Shown here piece after piece: positions 23,508-53,308 of a stretch of DNA of 64,000 nt. The stretch is from assembly GCA_053919585.1 (NCBI GenBank), contig CM132802.1, one strand, 5' to 3'. The translations under genes were made by a program, and so were the position numbers. This stretch comes from Euprymna scolopes (lineage: Eukaryota). The first letter of the stretch is position 1, and every line of letters begins with the position of its first letter. The notes beneath the pieces are model-generated. The model was not told the origin of the DNA, did not search any database, and saw nothing but the letters and a program-made list of their open reading frames with translations.

Positions 23508-25504
23508 TGGGGGTGTATTTAATTTGTGTGTATTCGGCAAAACAAAACATAAGTGAAATGGCTGCAGAGTGGTCTTAGAATTATTGAATCTATTGTGGAA
23601 CGCTCCACAGCTTGATCAGCTATTTTTATCCATACTGTATTAAGTCTAGCTCTCACTGTCCGTCTCACAAGAGATTTATCTACTTTTTACTGGACCGATA
23701 GAAAGAGTTGAATAAACATTTGTTGAGATAAGGGAAGTAATTATTCGACACTGTATCTTCTGAGGATGCTTTGTTGTTTGTCACTTTTTAAAAATAGAGT
23801 CGTCGGAAACACATCCTATGAATTACTTTCCGGGCACACGGCAATTGATGAAATAGATTAGTCGAGACATCGATTTTCGATCTCTCACAATTCCGACGCT
23901 CGTTGAATCCTTGTCTTTTTGGCGCACTTTTTACCACCCTTTGAAGTCTATTAATGTGTGACGAGATTACATGTCACCTGCTCGACAACATCGCTGACCC
24001 CATGTGTCGTGGATTTTTTCTTTTCCGTCTTCTCTTGTTCTAGTTCTGAACGTGTCGTCATATTACGCATTGGCAGTTGCTAAGAAGGTGCGCAAGGGTT
24101 CACAAGTAAAATTACAAAACCTAATTTCAATGGAAAACAAACATTCTGATACTTAACTTTTATAATGGTTGGGATCTGAGCGCGGGCGTGAGACAATCTA
24201 GAAAAGTAAGTCCTTAGAGCTAAAGGTCCTCATGTACCGTATCCGTGAATTTAGTCAGCCCATTTCGATTGTTTAAAGTCTTTCAATCTGGTCCAAGCAC
24301 TATCCGCCGTAAACTCATTTTTGCCAATCGTAATATATTTCTATTGTTTAGTGGTTTGCCATTTTAATAATTGCCTCACCTTATCATTTAAATAACTATT
24401 TCACATCAGGTTTCTTTTGTGCTTAAATTCCTACTAATTATCGGTTAATGAATTGTTCTAATCGTAGGTTTTTTTGTTTTACTTTCTTAGAATTGGGGGC
24501 ATAGTTTGACGTTAATATTATAACAAATGTACCGTCTGAAAGTTTGTCCAAGTCGGATATGATAGGTATTTTAGAAATATCTTACCAAAACGTATGATTA
24601 AATTCCGGTTGATAATGTTTTACGAAAAATTCTGCCACTTTATATTTTTGCTTGCACGAAAAAGGTGTATTATCTAAAAACATCCATGATGCAGATAGCG
24701 TTGACCTACAGTGAACAGTTATCTCTGAGTTTATTACAGATTCTGGCAGTCTGCTCTATAATGAAACGCTCAGTCTTACATTGACTTCAATATTTGTTCA
24801 ACCCATTTAAAGTTTGTTTTTTAAAGCGAACTTAGACATGTGATATCAGTTCTACATTGAAACAGATTTCTATTTTACATTAATGCTATTTATATATACT
24901 CAGTCTCGTAGGATTTAACTCTAATTTATATATCCATAAATCGCATCGAGGAAAAAGACATTGCTTTCTCTAATTATATATTCAATTTCTTGACTAAAAT
25001 TCAGGAAATCCATATGTAGATGTTTATCTGTCTGGTTTAAATCGTTGAAGTGAATAATGCTTCCTTATTGTATATAACTTATGAAATCTTTGCTTGAAAT
25101 GTGTTTTTTAAAATATCCAGTATTTATTTGGTTCGAGTTGAATGTTGTTCAGTATCGGGAAAGTAATCAAAAATGTAATTGAACTTAATAAAGCAATTTT
25201 TAATTTTGATTTCGGTAACAATTCAAATGAAAAAAGTTGTGGTGGATTTTAATGAATATATTCTACAACGACGCTTTAAAATGAGGTGGTAAGTGTGGCA
25301 GGAAGACTTAAATACAATTGATAAATCAATAAAGAGTTCGAAAAATCTTCTAAAATGTATATATATATATATAACTACTTCATTTATTCGCATAAATTTA
25401 ATATACGAAAGTATAGATTTATGCGTAAACTTTAAGTATTTACTTCAAAAGTGCTCAATACGTAGGTAGAGCTAGTTAGTAATTTATAAAATATATATGG
25501 CGAT

Positions 25505-25558
25505 TAAGCTACACTGAATATTCTGCGTTTCATCCAACTATAGGATTCGTCAGGCTTA
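25505..25558 (-). ncRNA. Type I hammerhead ribozyme (PLE pLTR), intact core
   Basis: Reverse complement reads UAAGC-CUGACGA-AUCC(UAUAGUU)GGAU-GAAA-CGC(A GAAUAUUC A)GU-GUA^GCUUA. Confidence 0.9.
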
Positions 25559-25564
25559 TGCGCA

Positions 25565-25618
25565 TAAGCCTGACGAATCCTATAGTTGGATGAAACGCAG
25601 AATATTCAGTGTAGCTTA
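25565..25618 (+). ncRNA. Type I hammerhead ribozyme (PLE pLTR), intact core
   Basis: TAAGC CTGACGA ATCC tatagtt GGAT GAAA CGC agaatattca GT GTA^GCTTA: stem I TAAGC/GCTTA, stem II ATCC/GGAT, stem III ACGC/GTGT, GUA cleavage triplet. Confidence 0.9.
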
Positions 25619-25641
25619 ATCGCCATATATATTTTATGAAT

Positions 25642-25690
<49 letters not shown>

Positions 25691-34328: not shown

Positions 34329-34402
34329 CTGTAAAAGTCTGAGGAAGCTACCAGACGGCCAAAAAACGGTCGTTTAGCTGAAACAATAATGTAACTAAAC
34401 AG
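34329..34402 (+). ncRNA. Type I hammerhead ribozyme, second family
   Basis: CTGT-aaa-AGT CTGAGGA AGCTA..GACGGCC(aaaaaac)GGTCGTT TAGCT GAAA CA(ataa)T GTA^ACT-aa-ACAG; all core nucleotides present. Confidence 0.75.
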
Positions 34403-34811
34403 AAAAATACGGTAATAAAAAATAAAACGCATATTTGCTCTACAACAGTATTGAGCACTTTATTCAGGTTTTTATTAATTACCATCACTACTATATATAC
34501 ATATATATATATTTATATATATATATATATATAATGGGTGTTACTTATTGTTTGAAAATGTGGATCTAAGAACGGAAAGCGACATTTGAGAAAAGTAAAG
34601 TAAATAAGGTTGAGTGTCTAAATTGTAACTGTAAGTTTTCTTTGGACAAATTACTCCAGCTTTATTCTTTTATTTTGTAAATTCAAATGTAATCAAACCT
34701 GAATCTAACATTTACCTTAGGCTAATTTTATGCTATGTACATTATGTTGTACTTTTTATATATCTTTAGTTAAACATTATACATCTAAATCATTCATTGT
34801 AATGTAAAAGA

Positions 34812-40487: not shown

Positions 40488-40544
<57 letters not shown>

Positions 40545-40567
40545 ATTTATAAAATATATATGGCGAT

Positions 40568-40620
40568 TAAGCTACACTGAATATTCGGCGTTTCATCCAC
40601 TATAGGATTCTTCAGGCTTA
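40568..40620 (-). ncRNA. Type I hammerhead ribozyme in the 3' pLTR, intact core
   Basis: Reverse complement TAAGC CTGAAGA ATCC tatagt GGAT GAAA CGC cgaatattca GT GTA^GCTTA. Confidence 0.9.
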
Positions 40621-40988
40621 TTGCACGAATTCTGTGGTTGTTTTTCGTTTTTATATATGTTGAGGATTTTAGTTAGCCAATCAGCTTTCTAGTATCCACC
40701 GCGCCCCTTCCTATCAGCTAATGGGCATGCATTTTATCGAACAAAGGATATGTTTTAGAACTAGGTTAGTGGTTTAAGGCAGACGATTTTCCTCATTTCT
40801 GCTCTTTTTTTATATAAATATACATATGTGTACACACATACATGCACACATATATACATATATATATACACATATATATATATACATACATATGTGTGGT
40901 CGTTTATGTATATTCATGTTCATCAAATTTATTTATTTATTTGTTTGTTTTCTATTGTTTTTGTTAGTTTTACAGCTATTTTGTATCA

Positions 40989-41477
40989 CTATCCTAGAGT
41001 AATTTTTATTTTGTGAACACAGTTGTTTGCTATTTCTCGTCTACAGTTTAATAGATTTTGGGGTTCTTTAAAGTACAGGATAGCAAATTTTTCATGGAGG
41101 CATAGTTTACATCGGTCATCTAAATGTCTCCACGTGGTAGCTTGTCATATTATTTTCCATTGGACTACCGGCGAATGTCCGCTTTCTTTGAGTTCCCAGT
41201 ATTTATTCGCTAGTGTTGTTTTCATACGGTGTTTTTTATTGTTGAATGTAATTTTGTGGTCATAGTATCGGGTTTTGAAATCTAAGGAAGTCATGCCTAT
41301 GTAATATTTCTTGTTATTTGGGTTTTCTTTCGCAAATATTGTTGCTTGATAAACTACGCTTTTGGTTAGACATTTATTTTGAACTGGGCAAAGTGTGCGG
41401 TGTCTACAATTGCATTTATCTTGTTCGTTATTATTATTATTTTTATTTATGGTATGGTTGTTCTTGTCCGGGGTTGG

Positions 41478-41528
<51 letters not shown>

Positions 41529-43085
41529 TCTGCTAGTGTTGGTTTATTTTTGTCATGGTGTCTACTTTTTTATTGCTTATTTTGTTTTCGTTTACATTGT
41601 TTTTATTTAGTATTTTATTATTATGTGCTTTAGTTATCATCTCTAAATTTTCGCAACAACTGTAAGATAACTTCAAGGTATTTTTATTGAAGATTTTGTG
41701 TAAGGGGTTAGTTGCGGGAAAGTGTTTTTCAATAAGGTCTAGAAATTTCTTACCAAGTTTTGTTTTTAACATTTGATTGTATGGGGCCGTATACCAAATT
41801 ATAGTTCTCTTTCTTCTATTTTTTATTTTATTATAGTTGTTGGTGTTTTGTTGCTTATATTTGATATCGATATTTTTGAATCCACTATTTTTTAGGGCTG
41901 TTTCGTTGACCTGTTAAATGCATTTTCATCGCTTGAGTTATTACTGAGTCTACTTACGATCGAGTTGGGAATGTGTTTTATAATTGATGGTGGGTGGTTG
42001 GACTTAGGGTTTACGTTAATTGGAGTAGCGTTATCTCTTAAGTATGGTTTATATGTGTTTTTATCTAAGTTTAACGTGACGTCCAGGAAGTTTGTTATTT
42101 TTATGTTAGCTGATACGTCTGCTTTTTTCATTTCTTTGTGTATGATTTTCTTAAAGTTTTCTCCCTTGACTTTGTTGGAGTTTTTTTATTATAGCTAGGC
42201 CGTCATCTCTATATAGGTCGATATCTGTAGTATCGAATATGCTTGTGAGGGTATATAGAATGAATAATCCCACAAGATCTTATGCGTCTGCAGAATCCCT
42301 GGCACTCATCGCCAAATCAAACGAATTTTTCATTTTAGTTTTTATCCATTGGTTATTGTTATTTATTAGAACTGATTTTCTACATTTTTTAATGATGTTG
42401 ATTTCTTCCGAGGATATATCAGTGTATGCCTCGGCAAATTCTAGGGCAATGTTAAAAAGTTCTTCGGATATCGAGGGATGAAAGTCTATGATGTCAAACT
42501 ATATGAACGTACATTTATGTTTGTTTTCTATATTTTTAAACCAGGTGATTGCTTCGGTAGTATTTGCCCACTGGTTTAGTTCTAGGTCCTGTTTGATTTG
42601 TTTGTTTACTCTAGAAAGTATAGTTTTGCTAATTCTACCTATTTCTGGTATAGTTGGGTTTATTAGGCGGGTGCTGGGATTATTATTAAAGTCCCATTTG
42701 TGGTCTTTGAGCAGAATGTATTCCTCTCTAGGTTTCAATTTGCCAAATTTATCGCTGATTTTTAGTTTATCGGTAATTTGTTTACTTTCAGTATTTATTA
42801 TATGTATGTAGTCGCATTCGTTTGTGTCTATTTTTTTGTTGTTTTTTGTAATGTTTTCTGTGATTAGTTTGTTATATTCTTGCTTATCTATTTTATAAAA
42901 GTTTCTGGTTTTATCTGTTTTTACAAAGATTTTATTAGAGTTGTTTATGTGTCTAACGATTTCGTGTAGTTTCCGTTGGAAATTATTAGGTTGATTGTGG
43001 AATTCTAGGTTTTTAATTACGTTTAAAAAGTAATTTTCAAAGTTTATCAAAAGGTCTACTTTTTTCGCATTTTTAAGGGTTTTAT
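40989..43085 (-). pseudogene. PLE reverse transcriptase / GIY-YIG endonuclease ORF, 5'-truncated and disrupted
   Basis: VKTDKTRNFY, RLINPT, LYRDDGL, NFLDVTLNL, SNHPPSI, CNCRHRTLCP linker, VVYQAT..YYIGMT..FKTRY, CKLCLHEK...CVH. Confidence 0.9.
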
Positions 43086-43168
43086 CCCCGCCCCCCCCAA
43101 AAAAAAGGACAGAAATGAGGAAAATCATCTCCGTTAAACCACTAACCTAGTTCTAAAACAGATTCTTT

Positions 43169-43262
43169 GTTCGATAAAATGCGTGCCCATTGGCTGATAG
43201 GAAGGGGCGCGGTGGATACTAGAAAGCTTATTGGCTAACTAAAATCCTCAACATATATAAAA
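43169..43262 (+). promoter_or_regulatory. Candidate Pol II promoter inside the pLTR
   Basis: Two inverted CCAAT boxes (ATTGGC), GGGGCGCGG GC box, and TATATAAAA about 30 nt upstream of the HHR; conserved at 40650-40730 (-) and 53060-53150. Confidence 0.55.
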
Positions 43263-43288
43263 ACGAAAAAATACACAGAATTCGCGCA

Positions 43289-43334
43289 TAAGCCTGACGA
43301 ATCCTATAGTGGATGAAACGCCGAATATTCAGTG
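43289..43334 (+). ncRNA. Hammerhead ribozyme copy, disabled by deletion
   Basis: CTGACGA/GAAA core present, but an about 29-nt deletion after AGTG removes the GUA^GCTTA cleavage site and the 3' strand of stem I. Confidence 0.8.
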
Positions 43335-43442
43335 TTACTAACTAGCTCTACCTACGTATTGAGCACCTTTGAAGTAAATACTTAGAGTTTACGCATAAAT
43401 CCATACTTTTGTATATTAATTTTATGTGAGTAAATGAAGTAG

Positions 43443-43494
<52 letters not shown>

Positions 43495-52879: not shown

Positions 52880-53252
52880 TTGATATAAACATGAATATCC
52901 ATAAAAGATCACACATATGTATGTATATATATATGTATATGCATATATATATATATTCATATATGTATGTACACATATGTATATTTATATAAAAAAAGGA
53001 AAATGGCTGCCTTAAACCACTAACCTAGTTCTAAAACAGATCCTTTGTTCGATAAAATGCATGACCATTGGCTGATAGGAAGGGGCGCGGTGGATACTTG
53101 AAGGCTGATTGGCTAACTAAAATCCTCAAAAGAAGAGGACCATATAAAAACGATAAACAACCACAGAATACGCGTATAAGCCTGACAAATCCTAGAGTGG
53201 ATGAAACGCCGAATATTCAGTGTAGCTTAATCGCCATATATATCTTATAAAT

Positions 53253-53257
<5 letters not shown>
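52880..53257 (+). mobile_element. Solo PLE 3'UTR/pLTR fragment
   Basis: Reverse-complement match to 40540-40925; ends ATTACTA followed by (TA)n. Confidence 0.9.
53177..53229 (+). ncRNA. Hammerhead ribozyme copy with a core mutation (CUGACAA; G8 to A)
   Basis: All stems intact, but the catalytic G8 is substituted. Confidence 0.8.

Positions 53258-53308
<51 letters not shown>

What the first reader, a model, noticed from the sequence alone, without database searches (positions are those of the whole stretch)
40540..43445. Naiad-type Penelope element with hammerhead-bearing pLTRs in inverted orientation; five HHR copies in the window
Seen: an RT/GIY-YIG frame on the minus strand with a CxCx5C linker (CNCRHRTLC), a sense pLTR with an intact HHR downstream, and an inverted pLTR at the truncated 5' end. 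The same HHR occurs at 25505, 25565, 40568, 43289 and 53177: three intact, one deleted at the cleavage site, one G8A. Known: PLE pLTRs carry HHRs, 5' inversions are typical of PLEs, and the CxCx5C linker is described for the Naiad clade. This links the orphan ribozyme copies to their autonomous partner within one window.
Basis: partly seen in the sequence, partly recalled or inferred. Interest (0 to 1): 0.75.

Follow-up and report, generated by a model that had tools for sequence, protein, structure and literature searches.

The report
Broken Hydra-clade Penelope retroelement copy

Summary
Between two (TA)n tracts (40492-40541, 43444-43491) lies a 5'-truncated minus-strand copy of a reverse transcriptase/GIY-YIG element (40542-43086). 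It is joined head-to-head to an inverted 3' fragment (43099-43443). Five hammerhead copies sit at the stated places: three intact, one with 29 nt deleted across the cleavage site, one G8A.

The "Naiad" label is wrong. The nuclease is C-terminal. The copy has DKT, the CxCX5C linker (CNCRHRTLC), no cysteines in the GIY-YIG core, a canonical hammerhead and a (TA)n target; full units are about 2.9 kb. This is the published diagnosis of the Hydra clade (PMC8557442). The same paper gives Naiads an N-terminal nuclease, DKA and no canonical hammerhead.

Fold searches place the protein nearest telomerase RT and the I-TevI nuclease. The window copy is not autonomous: it has three in-frame stops, three frameshifts and a lost 5' end. 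The family is huge, with 7,517 exact copies of a 35-nt ribozyme segment in this 5.9-Gb genome.

No phylogeny with named references was possible. The scan has already met this family and its head-to-head scars elsewhere in this genome, and at 25477-25646 of this window.

The parts
40492..40541 (.). (TA)n tract abutting the 3' end of the minus-strand copy (target microsatellite, left half)
40542..43086 (-). 5'-truncated copy of the roughly 2.9-kb element. It matches a fuller genomic copy (L010 1501-4122, which runs on into the flanking TA tract) at 92% identity.
40568..40620 (-). Intact type I hammerhead. Helix I is UAAGC/GCUUA, the core is CUGAAGA (40609-40615), helix II is AUCC/GGAU, and GAAA lies at 40591-40594. 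Helix III is A-U, C-G, G-U, C-G around a 10-nt loop that contains the palindrome GAAUAUUC. The predicted cut is GUA|G between 40573 and 40572.
40640..40803 (-). Upstream part of the pLTR. On the element's sense strand it reads like a promoter: ATTGG (CCAAT) boxes, a GGGGCGCGG box and TATATAAAAA about 30 nt before the hammerhead's 5' edge. The promoter reading is an inference.
   Evidence: a pLTR promoter is proposed for PLEs in PMC11167929
40992..41414 (-). Linker and GIY-YIG endonuclease remnant. CNCRHRTLC (CxCX5C) lies at 41388-41414, VVY at 41343-41357 and YIG at 41289-41306. R and H lie in FKTRYYDH (41256-41279). CxxC plus E lie at 41088-41114, and N plus CxH at 41013-41054. An in-frame TGA sits at 41145-41147.
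41536..43086 (-). Reverse-transcriptase remnant. FVKTDKTRNFY (DKT) lies at 42895-42927, motif A FDIIDFHPSI at 42469-42498 and YRDDG at 42199-42213. SNHPPSI of the thumb lies at 41982-42002. In-frame stops are TAG at 42499-42501 and TAA at 42280-42282. Frameshifts lie near 42190, 41905 and 41540.
43087..43098 (.). 12-nt C-rich filler (CCCCGCCCCCCC) between the two 5' ends; it matches neither arm.
43099..43340 (+). Inverted arm: about the last 240 nt of a unit, i.e. the pLTR. The hammerhead core lies at 43289-43335. A 29-nt deletion after 43335 removes the cleavage site and the 3' strand of helix I.
43341..43443 (+). 'Tail': the first roughly 103 nt of the next tandem unit (ACTAGCTC...GTAGTTATA). 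It includes a GCTC-N12-GAGCAC(C) box at 43345-43367 and ends at the (TA)n tract.
43444..43491 (.). (TA)n tract abutting the 3' end of the plus-strand arm (target microsatellite, right half)
25374..25644 (.). Head-to-head pair of very short copies of the same family. The minus arm holds the tail plus a hammerhead (25505-25558). The plus arm holds a hammerhead (25565-25618) and runs to the short end. The arms join over the self-complementary GCGC, and (TA)n lies on both sides.
52885..53255 (+). Solo 5'-truncated 3' fragment of the same family. Its hammerhead (53177-53229) carries G8A (CUGACAA, A at 53187). The fragment ends in (TA)n at 53256-53305.

Best explanation
What it is. The locus is one old insertion of a Hydra-clade Penelope-like retroelement (PLE) into a (TA)n microsatellite. 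A full unit is about 2.9 kb. It runs: 5' UTR, one ORF of about 750 codons (N-terminal RWK/DKT region, telomerase-like RT, CxCX5C linker, C-terminal GIY-YIG nuclease without CCHH), then a 3' UTR. Repeated in partial tandem, that 3' UTR forms the pLTR, which carries a type I hammerhead 33 nt before the unit's end.

How it most likely works (inferred from the anatomy and from published work on another PLE). The nuclease nicks both strands of the TA tract, and each 3'-OH primes reverse transcription. Copying starts inside the RNA at one of two fixed sites: ...AAAUUACUA, or about 105 nt further on at ...GUAGUUAUA. This yields two 5'-truncated cDNAs that meet head-to-head with their 3' ends facing outward. 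Here one arm is 2.5 kb long and ends at the short site. The other is 0.34 kb long and ends at the 'tail' site.

The hammerhead has a complete catalytic core but a weak helix III whose loop holds an 8-nt palindrome. It therefore probably cuts only when two copies pair, or with protein help, trimming multimeric or read-through transcripts at GUA|GCUUAAUCGCC.

This particular copy is dead. The 25.5-kb and 53-kb hammerheads are shorter products of the same family.
For: Clade features, compared with PMC8557442 section 11:
- C-terminal EN after the RT.
- DKT at 42895-42927.
- CxCX5C at 41388-41414.
- No Cys between GIY and YIG. CxxC and CxH flank the invariant E and N across 29 homologues.
- RWK in the family consensus.
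- Unit of about 2.9 kb.
- (TA)n at both ends.

Folds. The whole-protein model (pLDDT 80.8) matches telomerase TERT best, at E 1.3e-8, followed by other RTs. The EN model (pLDDT 93.3) matches I-TevI at Z 8.6, rmsd 2.5 A over 91 residues. It also matches T4 EndoII at Z 7.2 and UvrC GIY-YIG at Z 5.8.

Relatives. More than 538 proteins of about 700 aa, mostly on contigs of about 2.5 kb, are homologous; some come from a jellyfish.

Hammerhead.
- The descriptor scan gives 3 hits against about 0.13 by chance.
- Co-folding two copies gives exactly the dimeric hammerhead, with an intermolecular helix III (-31.2 against 2 x -10.1 kcal/mol).
- Homologous elements from other organisms carry hammerheads at the same place. 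Their helices I, II and III differ completely, while CUGANGA, GAAA and UA are unchanged.
- A covariance model built from this family finds one of them at E 1e-4.

Insertion mode.
- The 35-nt ribozyme segment occurs 3,790 + 3,727 times, with 0 in the reversed control.
- Among the first 100 places, 13 close pairs are (-,+) and none are (+,-).
- Of about 60 hammerhead 3' contexts, about 28 end at the short site plus (TA)n. About 17 end at the identical tail site plus (TA)n.
- Both arms share a segment absent from the two other copies aligned with them.
- Extension of both strands and two internal RT start sites were shown in vitro for the anole PLE (PMC11167929).
Against: - No phylogeny with named Hydra, Naiad, Neptune, Nematis or Poseidon references could be made. 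The paper's supplements are not held.
- Pfam finds nothing in this family's own frames. Among 30 homologues it finds GIY-YIG in 3 and RVT_1 in 1.
- Sequence and profile searches of the PDB are blank.
- Rfam's hammerhead models do not score the motif even at E <= 10. They also miss the canonical-looking hammerhead of a related element.
- The monomer's lowest-energy fold replaces helix III (-10.1 against -7.6 kcal/mol for the hammerhead fold, z -1.1).
- The dimer's energy gain is not beyond shuffles (29 of 200 reach it).
- Presence or absence of an IFD was not settled.
- The RWK region is missing from this truncated copy.
Confidence: 0.9

Rival explanations
1. It is a Naiad-type PLE that, unusually, carries canonical hammerheads.
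For: The element is a PLE that prefers (TA)n, which is also reported for Naiads. A cysteine-rich linker precedes the GIY-YIG domain.
Against: - Naiads have the EN N-terminal to the RT, a CxC motif between EN and RT, DKA, the CCHH motif, units of 3.4-4.4 kb and no canonical HHR.
- Here the EN is C-terminal and the N-terminal region has no cysteine at all.
- The motif is DKT and CCHH is absent.
- The unit is about 2.9 kb and the HHR is canonical.
- CxCX5C is described for Hydra, not for Naiad.
Confidence: 0.02
2. It belongs to another canonical C-terminal-EN clade (Nematis, Neptune or Penelope/Poseidon) rather than to Hydra.
For: It shares the domain order, HHR-bearing pLTRs, tail and inverted 5' copies with all of these. 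[quoted passage not shown]
Against: Those clades have DKG, the CCHH motif inside the GIY-YIG core and (Neptune, Nematis) a CX2-5CxxC linker. This family has DKT, no CCHH and CxCX5C, all invariant across 29-30 homologues.
Confidence: 0.05
3. The inverted pLTR is a second, independent insertion into the same TA tract, not the product of one event.
For: (TA)n tracts are hot targets for this family. The two arms are only about 93% identical. The 12-nt filler between them is untemplated.
Against: Both arms share a segment absent from the two other copies aligned with them. Genome-wide, close pairs are always (-,+), with 3' ends outward: 13 against 0. Independent hits would not produce that bias. 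The arms abut directly, with no TA tract between them.
Confidence: 0.08
4. The hammerhead motif is conserved but is not used for self-cleavage in this element's cycle. It could be an RT- or protein-binding fold, or a passenger.
For: - The monomer folds poorly into the active shape.
- Metazoan PLE hammerheads cut weakly in vitro (PMC4209133).
- In the anole PLE, catalytic mutants did not affect insertion in vitro.
- No RNA-seq reads ended at the anole cut site, and cleavage there needed the protein (PMC11167929).
Against: The complete catalytic core and all three helices are kept across distant lineages with fully different helix sequences. That is hard to explain without selection for the ribozyme fold. 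The palindromic loop 3 fits the dimer mechanism.
Confidence: 0.3

Closest known systems
Hydra clade of Penelope-like elements (Craig et al. 2021, PMC8557442)
   Same: It shares C-terminal GIY-YIG, DKT, RWK, a CxCX5C linker and the lack of CCHH. It also has CxxC and CxH around the catalytic E and N, a divergent RT4(B), a canonical HHR, (TA)n targets, a unit under 3 kb and aquatic invertebrate hosts.
   Different: - Copy number is very high here (over 7,500 exact ribozyme segments).
- The 'tail' is about 105 nt, not the 30-40 nt given for PLEs in general.
- Helix III of the HHR carries a 10-nt loop with an 8-nt palindrome, rather than a short palindromic stem.
- Placement by phylogeny was not done.
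Naiad clade of PLEs (same paper)
   Same: It is a PLE with (TA)n preference, pLTRs, and inverted 5'-truncated partners.
   Different: Naiads have an N-terminal EN, a CxC (zf-CDGSH-like) motif, DKA, an IFD, CCHH, units of 3.4-4.4 kb and no canonical HHR. None of the features tested here is met; the IFD was not settled.
Poseidon PLE of Anolis carolinensis (PAc), studied in vitro (Frangieh et al. 2024, PMC11167929)
   Same: It shares the mechanistic picture: AT-rich target, extension of both strands, and two adjacent internal RT start sites whose interval is the genomic 'tail'. It also shares an HHR that needs help to cut.
   Different: The clade differs. In PAc the HHR overlaps the ORF start; here it lies 33 nt before the unit's end. 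Nothing was tested biochemically here.
Minimal and type I hammerheads of metazoan PLEs (Cervera and de la Pena 2014, PMC4209133)
   Same: It is a type I motif in the pLTR with a short helix I (5 bp), a palindromic helix III/loop 3 that implies dimeric action, and many solo copies, including close pairs on opposite strands.
   Different: Helix II is the canonical 4 bp with no bulged base, and helix III has 4 pairs plus a large loop. Rfam's models do not score it.
Non-LTR retrozymes / hammerhead-bearing non-autonomous elements
   Same: The short hammerhead-only copies (25.5 kb, 53 kb) look like such elements. A 2026 preprint derives vertebrate retrozymes from PLE pLTRs.
   Different: Here the short copies are simply truncated products of the coding family (same sequence, same ends). 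They are not tandem circular-RNA-type repeats.

Membership tests
Hydra clade PLE | GIY-YIG endonuclease C-terminal to the RT, in a single ORF | tested here: met
   The order on the minus strand is RT motifs, then CNCRHRTLC, then GIY-YIG. Open frames of 708-723 aa in other copies have the same order.
Hydra clade PLE | DKG motif modified to DKT | tested here: met
   FVKTDKTRNFY lies at 42895-42927. D and K of ADKT are invariant, and A and T are kept in at least 90% of 30 homologues.
Hydra clade PLE | N-terminal RWK motif | tested here: met
   The family consensus reads IKRMRWKAxFF. L005 reads RMRWR. The region is lost from the truncated window copy.
Hydra clade PLE | [quoted passage not shown] | tested here: met
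   CNCRHRTLC lies at 41388-41414. C7, C9, C15, P16 and C21 are invariant in 29 sequences.
Hydra clade PLE | CCHH motif inside the GIY-YIG core absent; CxxC and CxH beside the catalytic E and N | tested here: met
   There is no conserved Cys between Y28 and G46. C108, C111, E114, N129, C138 and H140 are invariant. The window copy keeps RCKLCLHEK and NCRREIANNCVH.
Hydra clade PLE | Canonical hammerhead in the pLTR | tested here: met
   it lies at the same position in related elements L046, L049, L050 and L051
Hydra clade PLE | Insertion into (TA)n; element shorter than 3 kb | tested here: met
   (TA)n lies at both ends here and at about 45 of about 60 family 3' ends. The unit is about 2.9 kb.
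Hydra clade PLE | No IFD between RT3(A) and RT4(B) | tested here: inconclusive
   63 residues separate the motif A Asp from the motif B Gly, with two helices and a hairpin in the model. No reference PLE was on hand for comparison.
Hydra clade PLE | RT groups with Hydra families in a phylogeny with named references | not testable with these tools
   No named PLE reference sequences were reachable, and the paper's supplements are not held.
Naiad clade PLE | N-terminal GIY-YIG linked to the RT by a CxC domain; DKA; CCHH present; no canonical HHR | tested here: not met
   The EN is C-terminal and the N-terminus has no cysteine. The motif is DKT, CCHH is absent and the HHR is present.
Penelope-like elements in general | Telomerase-like RT plus a GIY-YIG nuclease fold | tested here: met
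   Foldseek's best matches are TERT (E 1.3e-8). The EN model matches I-TevI at Z 8.6, EndoII at 7.2 and UvrC at 5.8.
Penelope-like elements in general | Partial tandem (pLTR), inverted 5'-truncated partner, and a tail at one end only | tested here: met
   Upstream and downstream HHRs lie about 2.9 kb apart in L003, L009, L010 and L012. Close pairs are (-,+) 13 times and (+,-) never. The tail is on one arm only, both here and at 25.5 kb.
Hammerhead ribozyme, type I | Core C3-U-G-A-N-G8-A9, G12-A-A, an A15.1-U16.1 pair, H17, three helices and an open helix I | tested here: met
Hammerhead ribozyme, type I | Helices kept by compensatory change between lineages | tested here: met
   Helix I: UAAGC/GCUUA, UCAUU/AGUGA, CUGU/ACAG, CGCUA/UAGCG. 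Helix II: AUCC/GGAU, GAGCA/UGUUC, GUGC/GCAC, a 10-bp stem. Cores are invariant. This is a hand table, not a formal covariation test.
Hammerhead ribozyme, type I | Scores above Rfam's gathering threshold for a hammerhead model | tested here: not met
   There is no hammerhead hit at the gathering score or at E <= 10. The control hammerhead of L046 is missed as well, so this test has little power for PLE-type motifs.
Hammerhead ribozyme, type I | Self-cleavage at the predicted site | not testable with these tools

The most novel reading that the evidence does not exclude
The two alternative cDNA start sites of this family are each specified by a short module lying just 3' of them, CU(A/U)AGCUC-N11-12-GAGCACU. 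The module is conserved, as two GAGCACU boxes 54-61 nt and about 115-165 nt past the hammerhead cut, in Hydra-clade elements of unrelated animals. It would then be the clade's reverse-transcriptase recognition and initiation signal. The pLTR promoter would start transcription right at the hammerhead's 5' edge, which would explain the thousands of 84- and 188-nt mirror-image scars. The scan has already noted this signal elsewhere in this genome.
Probability: 0.4. Interest if true: 0.5.

Novelty: new member of a known kind. Interest (0 to 1): 0.22.

Why it matters
The finding would have been striking had it been a Naiad with hammerheads, because Naiads are defined partly by lacking them. It is not one.

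What remains is a clean and very abundant example of the little-studied Hydra clade in a large genome that earlier notes of this scan call molluscan. Its insertion scars are unusually legible: two fixed 3' ends, outward-facing pairs and a natural G8A variant. Those scars could help test the published model of internal initiation and two-strand priming in Penelope-like elements. They could also help test what the hammerhead does.

For annotation, the point is practical. Neither Pfam nor Rfam flags this family, so thousands of copies may go unlabelled.

Tried and rejected
- Rfam at gathering score and at E <= 10 on three small stretches gave no hammerhead hit. The perfect palindrome at 25.5 kb gave only spurious sub-threshold miRNA-hairpin hits.
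- Pfam on the seven ORF pieces and on two long frames gave nothing usable.
- PDB sequence and profile searches were blank.
- The supplements of PMC8557442 are not held, so there were no reference sequences and no RT tree.
- MAFFT misaligned the foreign hammerheads. I used a covariance model and a hand table instead; the count of structure pairs was not run.
- The bacterial-type promoter/terminator scan is irrelevant to an animal element.
- The closest foreign homologues (L043-L045) showed no hammerhead under my descriptor, and L048 showed one only weakly with the covariance model. Their contigs may not reach the pLTR, or the motif may vary.
Full report
**Observation**

The stretch 40492-43491 consists of a (TA)25 tract, 2.9 kb of repeat and a (TA)24 tract.

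Coding remnants. On the minus strand the repeat reads as pieces of one protein, in this order:
- an N-terminal region with FVKTDKTRNFY (42895-42927);
- RT motifs FDIIDFHPSI (42469-42498) and YRDDG (42199-42213);
- SNHPPSI (41982-42002);
- a poly-Asn tract;
- CNCRHRTLC (41388-41414);
- a GIY-YIG domain: VVYQA at 41343-41357, YYIGMT at 41289-41306, and RCKLCLHEK and NCRREIANNCVH further on.

The frame is interrupted by TAG at 42499-42501, TAA at 42280-42282 and TGA at 41145-41147. Frameshifts lie near 42190, 41905 and 41540.

Hammerheads.
- Downstream, on the same strand, sits a hammerhead at 40568-40620. It has helix I UAAGC/GCUUA, CUGAAGA, helix II AUCC/GGAU, GAAA, a 4-pair helix III and the site GUA|G.
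- At the other end, on the plus strand, the last 240 nt or so of the element are repeated in inverted orientation (43099-43340). In this hammerhead 29 nt are missing after 43335, which removes A17 and the 3' strand of helix I.
- A descriptor scan of the whole window finds exactly three intact hammerheads, at 25505-25558(-), 25565-25618(+) and 40568-40620(-). Shuffles give about 0.13 per window.
- The fifth copy (53177-53229) reads CUGACAA, i.e. G8A.

**What the element is**

Copies in the genome.
- The window belongs to a 5.9-Gb assembly, and the coding part has thousands of relatives there at about 94% identity.
- Fuller copies show a 5' hammerhead and a 3' hammerhead about 2.9 kb apart (L003, L009, L010 and L012). 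The ORF starts about 210 nt after the unit's start.
- Some copies have frames open over 708-723 codons.
- Mapped on such a copy, the window's minus-strand copy starts about 340 nt into the unit (an estimate from the map). It has therefore lost the 5' UTR and roughly the first 70 codons. The plus-strand arm is the last 240 nt or so plus about 103 nt of the next unit.

Sequence and fold evidence.
- Pfam does not recognise the protein. Word-based homology search finds more than 538 proteins of about 700 aa, mostly on contigs of about 2.5 kb. Some are from the jellyfish Sanderia.
- An alignment of 30 of them (A2) has these conserved blocks: RMRWK, ADKT, LKDHK...RLINP, FDIxDFYPSI, a divergent motif B, YRDDG, SNHPP, KVSYSC, CNCRxKxxCP, VYxA...YIGLT...FKxRYxxH, RCxLCLxEK and NKRSELxSKCRH.
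- The AlphaFold model built from this alignment (pLDDT 80.8) matches telomerase TERT best (3du5, E 1.3e-8). Next come DRT, retron, LINE-1, R2 and group II intron RTs.
- The C-terminal 147 residues modelled alone (pLDDT 93.3) match the I-TevI catalytic domain at Z 8.6 (rmsd 2.5 A, 91 of 92 residues). They also match T4 EndoII at Z 7.2 and the UvrC GIY-YIG domain at Z 5.8.

The protein is thus a telomerase-like RT with a C-terminal GIY-YIG nuclease, which defines an EN+ Penelope-like element.

**Which clade**

Craig et al. 2021 (PMC8557442) describe the two clades as follows.
- Naiads have an N-terminal EN joined to the RT by a CxC domain. They have DKA, an IFD, CCHH, units of 3.4-4.4 kb and no canonical hammerhead.
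- Hydra elements have a C-terminal EN and are shorter than 3 kb. They have RWK and DKT, a divergent RT4(B) and no CCHH. Their linker is "modified to a CxCX5C motif", with CxxC and CxH beside the conserved E and N. They have canonical hammerheads and insert into (TA)n.

The present family meets each Hydra feature that I could test and fails each Naiad feature that I could test (see the membership table). The IFD question stays open.

**The hammerhead**

- Rfam's models do not score it. They also miss the textbook-looking hammerhead of a related element, so this silence says little.
- The case rests first on the complete core and three helices. It rests second on comparison with homologous elements from other organisms.
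- Related elements L046, L049, L050 and L051 carry a hammerhead between successive ORFs. Their helices I and II differ entirely, helix III is palindromic (CAGAUCUG, CUCGAG, CAGUUCUG) or nearly so (CUCGGAG), and CUGANGA, GAAA and UA are unchanged.
- A covariance model built from ten variants of this family finds the L046 motif at E 1e-4. It finds the others weakly.
- The monomer alone prefers a fold without helix III: -10.1 against -7.6 kcal/mol for the hammerhead fold, z -1.1.
- Two copies co-fold into the classical dimeric hammerhead through the loop palindrome GAAUAUUC, at -31.2 kcal/mol. That gain is not beyond shuffles, since 29 of 200 reach it.
- This matches the published view of metazoan PLE hammerheads as dimer-dependent and weak in vitro (PMC4209133). 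In one case they were protein-assisted and dispensable for insertion in vitro (PMC11167929).
- Self-cleavage here is therefore inferred, not shown. The reads tools that could have tested it were not available.

**How the insertion arose**

- A 35-nt segment of the ribozyme occurs 7,517 times in the genome and never in the reversed control. Among the first 100 places, 13 close pairs are oriented (-,+), with 3' ends outward, and none (+,-).
- In about 60 hammerhead 3' contexts the element ends either at ...AAATTACTA (about 28) or about 105 nt further at ...GTAGTTATA (about 17). In both cases it runs directly into (TA)n. Otherwise it continues into a full unit.
- In the window, each head-to-head pair has one arm with the tail and one without.
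- The two arms of the 40.5-43.4 kb insertion share a segment absent from the two other copies aligned with them. They are separated by a 12-nt C-rich filler.
- This is the architecture drawn for PLEs by Craig et al.. It fits the in-vitro result that a PLE protein nicks and extends both strands and starts reverse transcription at two internal RNA sites whose interval is the 'tail'.
- I therefore read the locus as one event in a TA microsatellite, followed by decay. The arms are about 93% identical, and the body is 92-94% identical to other copies.

**Novelty and score**

The kind is known (2021), and molluscs are among the hosts listed for Hydra. The scan has already reported this family's scars and its tail signal elsewhere in this genome, and also the palindrome at 25477-25646 of this window.

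The family's abundance, its long tail and its large palindromic loop 3 are variations of degree. I rate it a new member of a known kind, of low interest.

The most novel reading left open is that the conserved GCUC-N12-GAGCACU modules next to the two start sites are the clade's RT initiation signal.

I built no consensus and repaired no frame. All queries were natural copies.

Noticed in passing
window 43341-43367 and 25440-25482(-); L010 1162-1300; L043, L045, L046, L048, L049, L051 5' UTRs: Each of the family's two alternative 3' ends is followed, in full copies, by CT(A/T)AGCTC-N11-12-GAGCACT. Six related elements from other organisms also carry two GAGCACT boxes between hammerhead and ATG. 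Box 1 lies 54-61 nt past the cut site in four lineages. This is a candidate RT initiation signal, already noted by the scan elsewhere in this genome.
   Followed up: partly
window 40640-40720(-), 43150-43290(+), 53030-53180(+): The pLTR reads like a Pol II promoter on the element's sense strand: two ATTGG (CCAAT) boxes, GGGGCGCGG and TATATAAAAA. About 30 nt later comes GCGCATAAGCC, the 5' edge of the hammerhead. That same GCGC is where the two arms of the 25.5-kb palindrome meet. This suggests that transcripts start there.
   Followed up: partly
window 34329-34470: Remnant of a second hammerhead family: CUGAGGA, a long helix II and GAAAC...GUA. Its own TATTGAGCACT box lies about 65 nt downstream. 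It is probably another Hydra-type lineage.
   Followed up: no
window 41440-41540: An (ATT/AAT)n microsatellite lies inside the ORF and encodes a poly-Asn run in the RT-EN linker. Its length varies between copies, from about 8 to over 20 Asn, and the AlphaFold model is disordered there (residues 522-579).
   Followed up: no
window 40806-40900: An internal (TA)/(CA)-type microsatellite lies in the 3' UTR, just upstream of the pLTR core. The inverted arm is truncated near this point.
   Followed up: no
own genome, listing: Close (-,+) hammerhead pairs fall into recurrent spacings (70-72 nt, 85 nt, about 381 nt). This implies preferred 5' end points of the arms. The 85-nt class equals the GCGC-joined palindrome seen at 25.5 kb.
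   Followed up: partly
window 25773 onward: A run of N (an assembly gap or masked stretch) begins about 85 nt past the (TA)n tract that flanks the palindromic insertion. I left it untouched.
   Followed up: no
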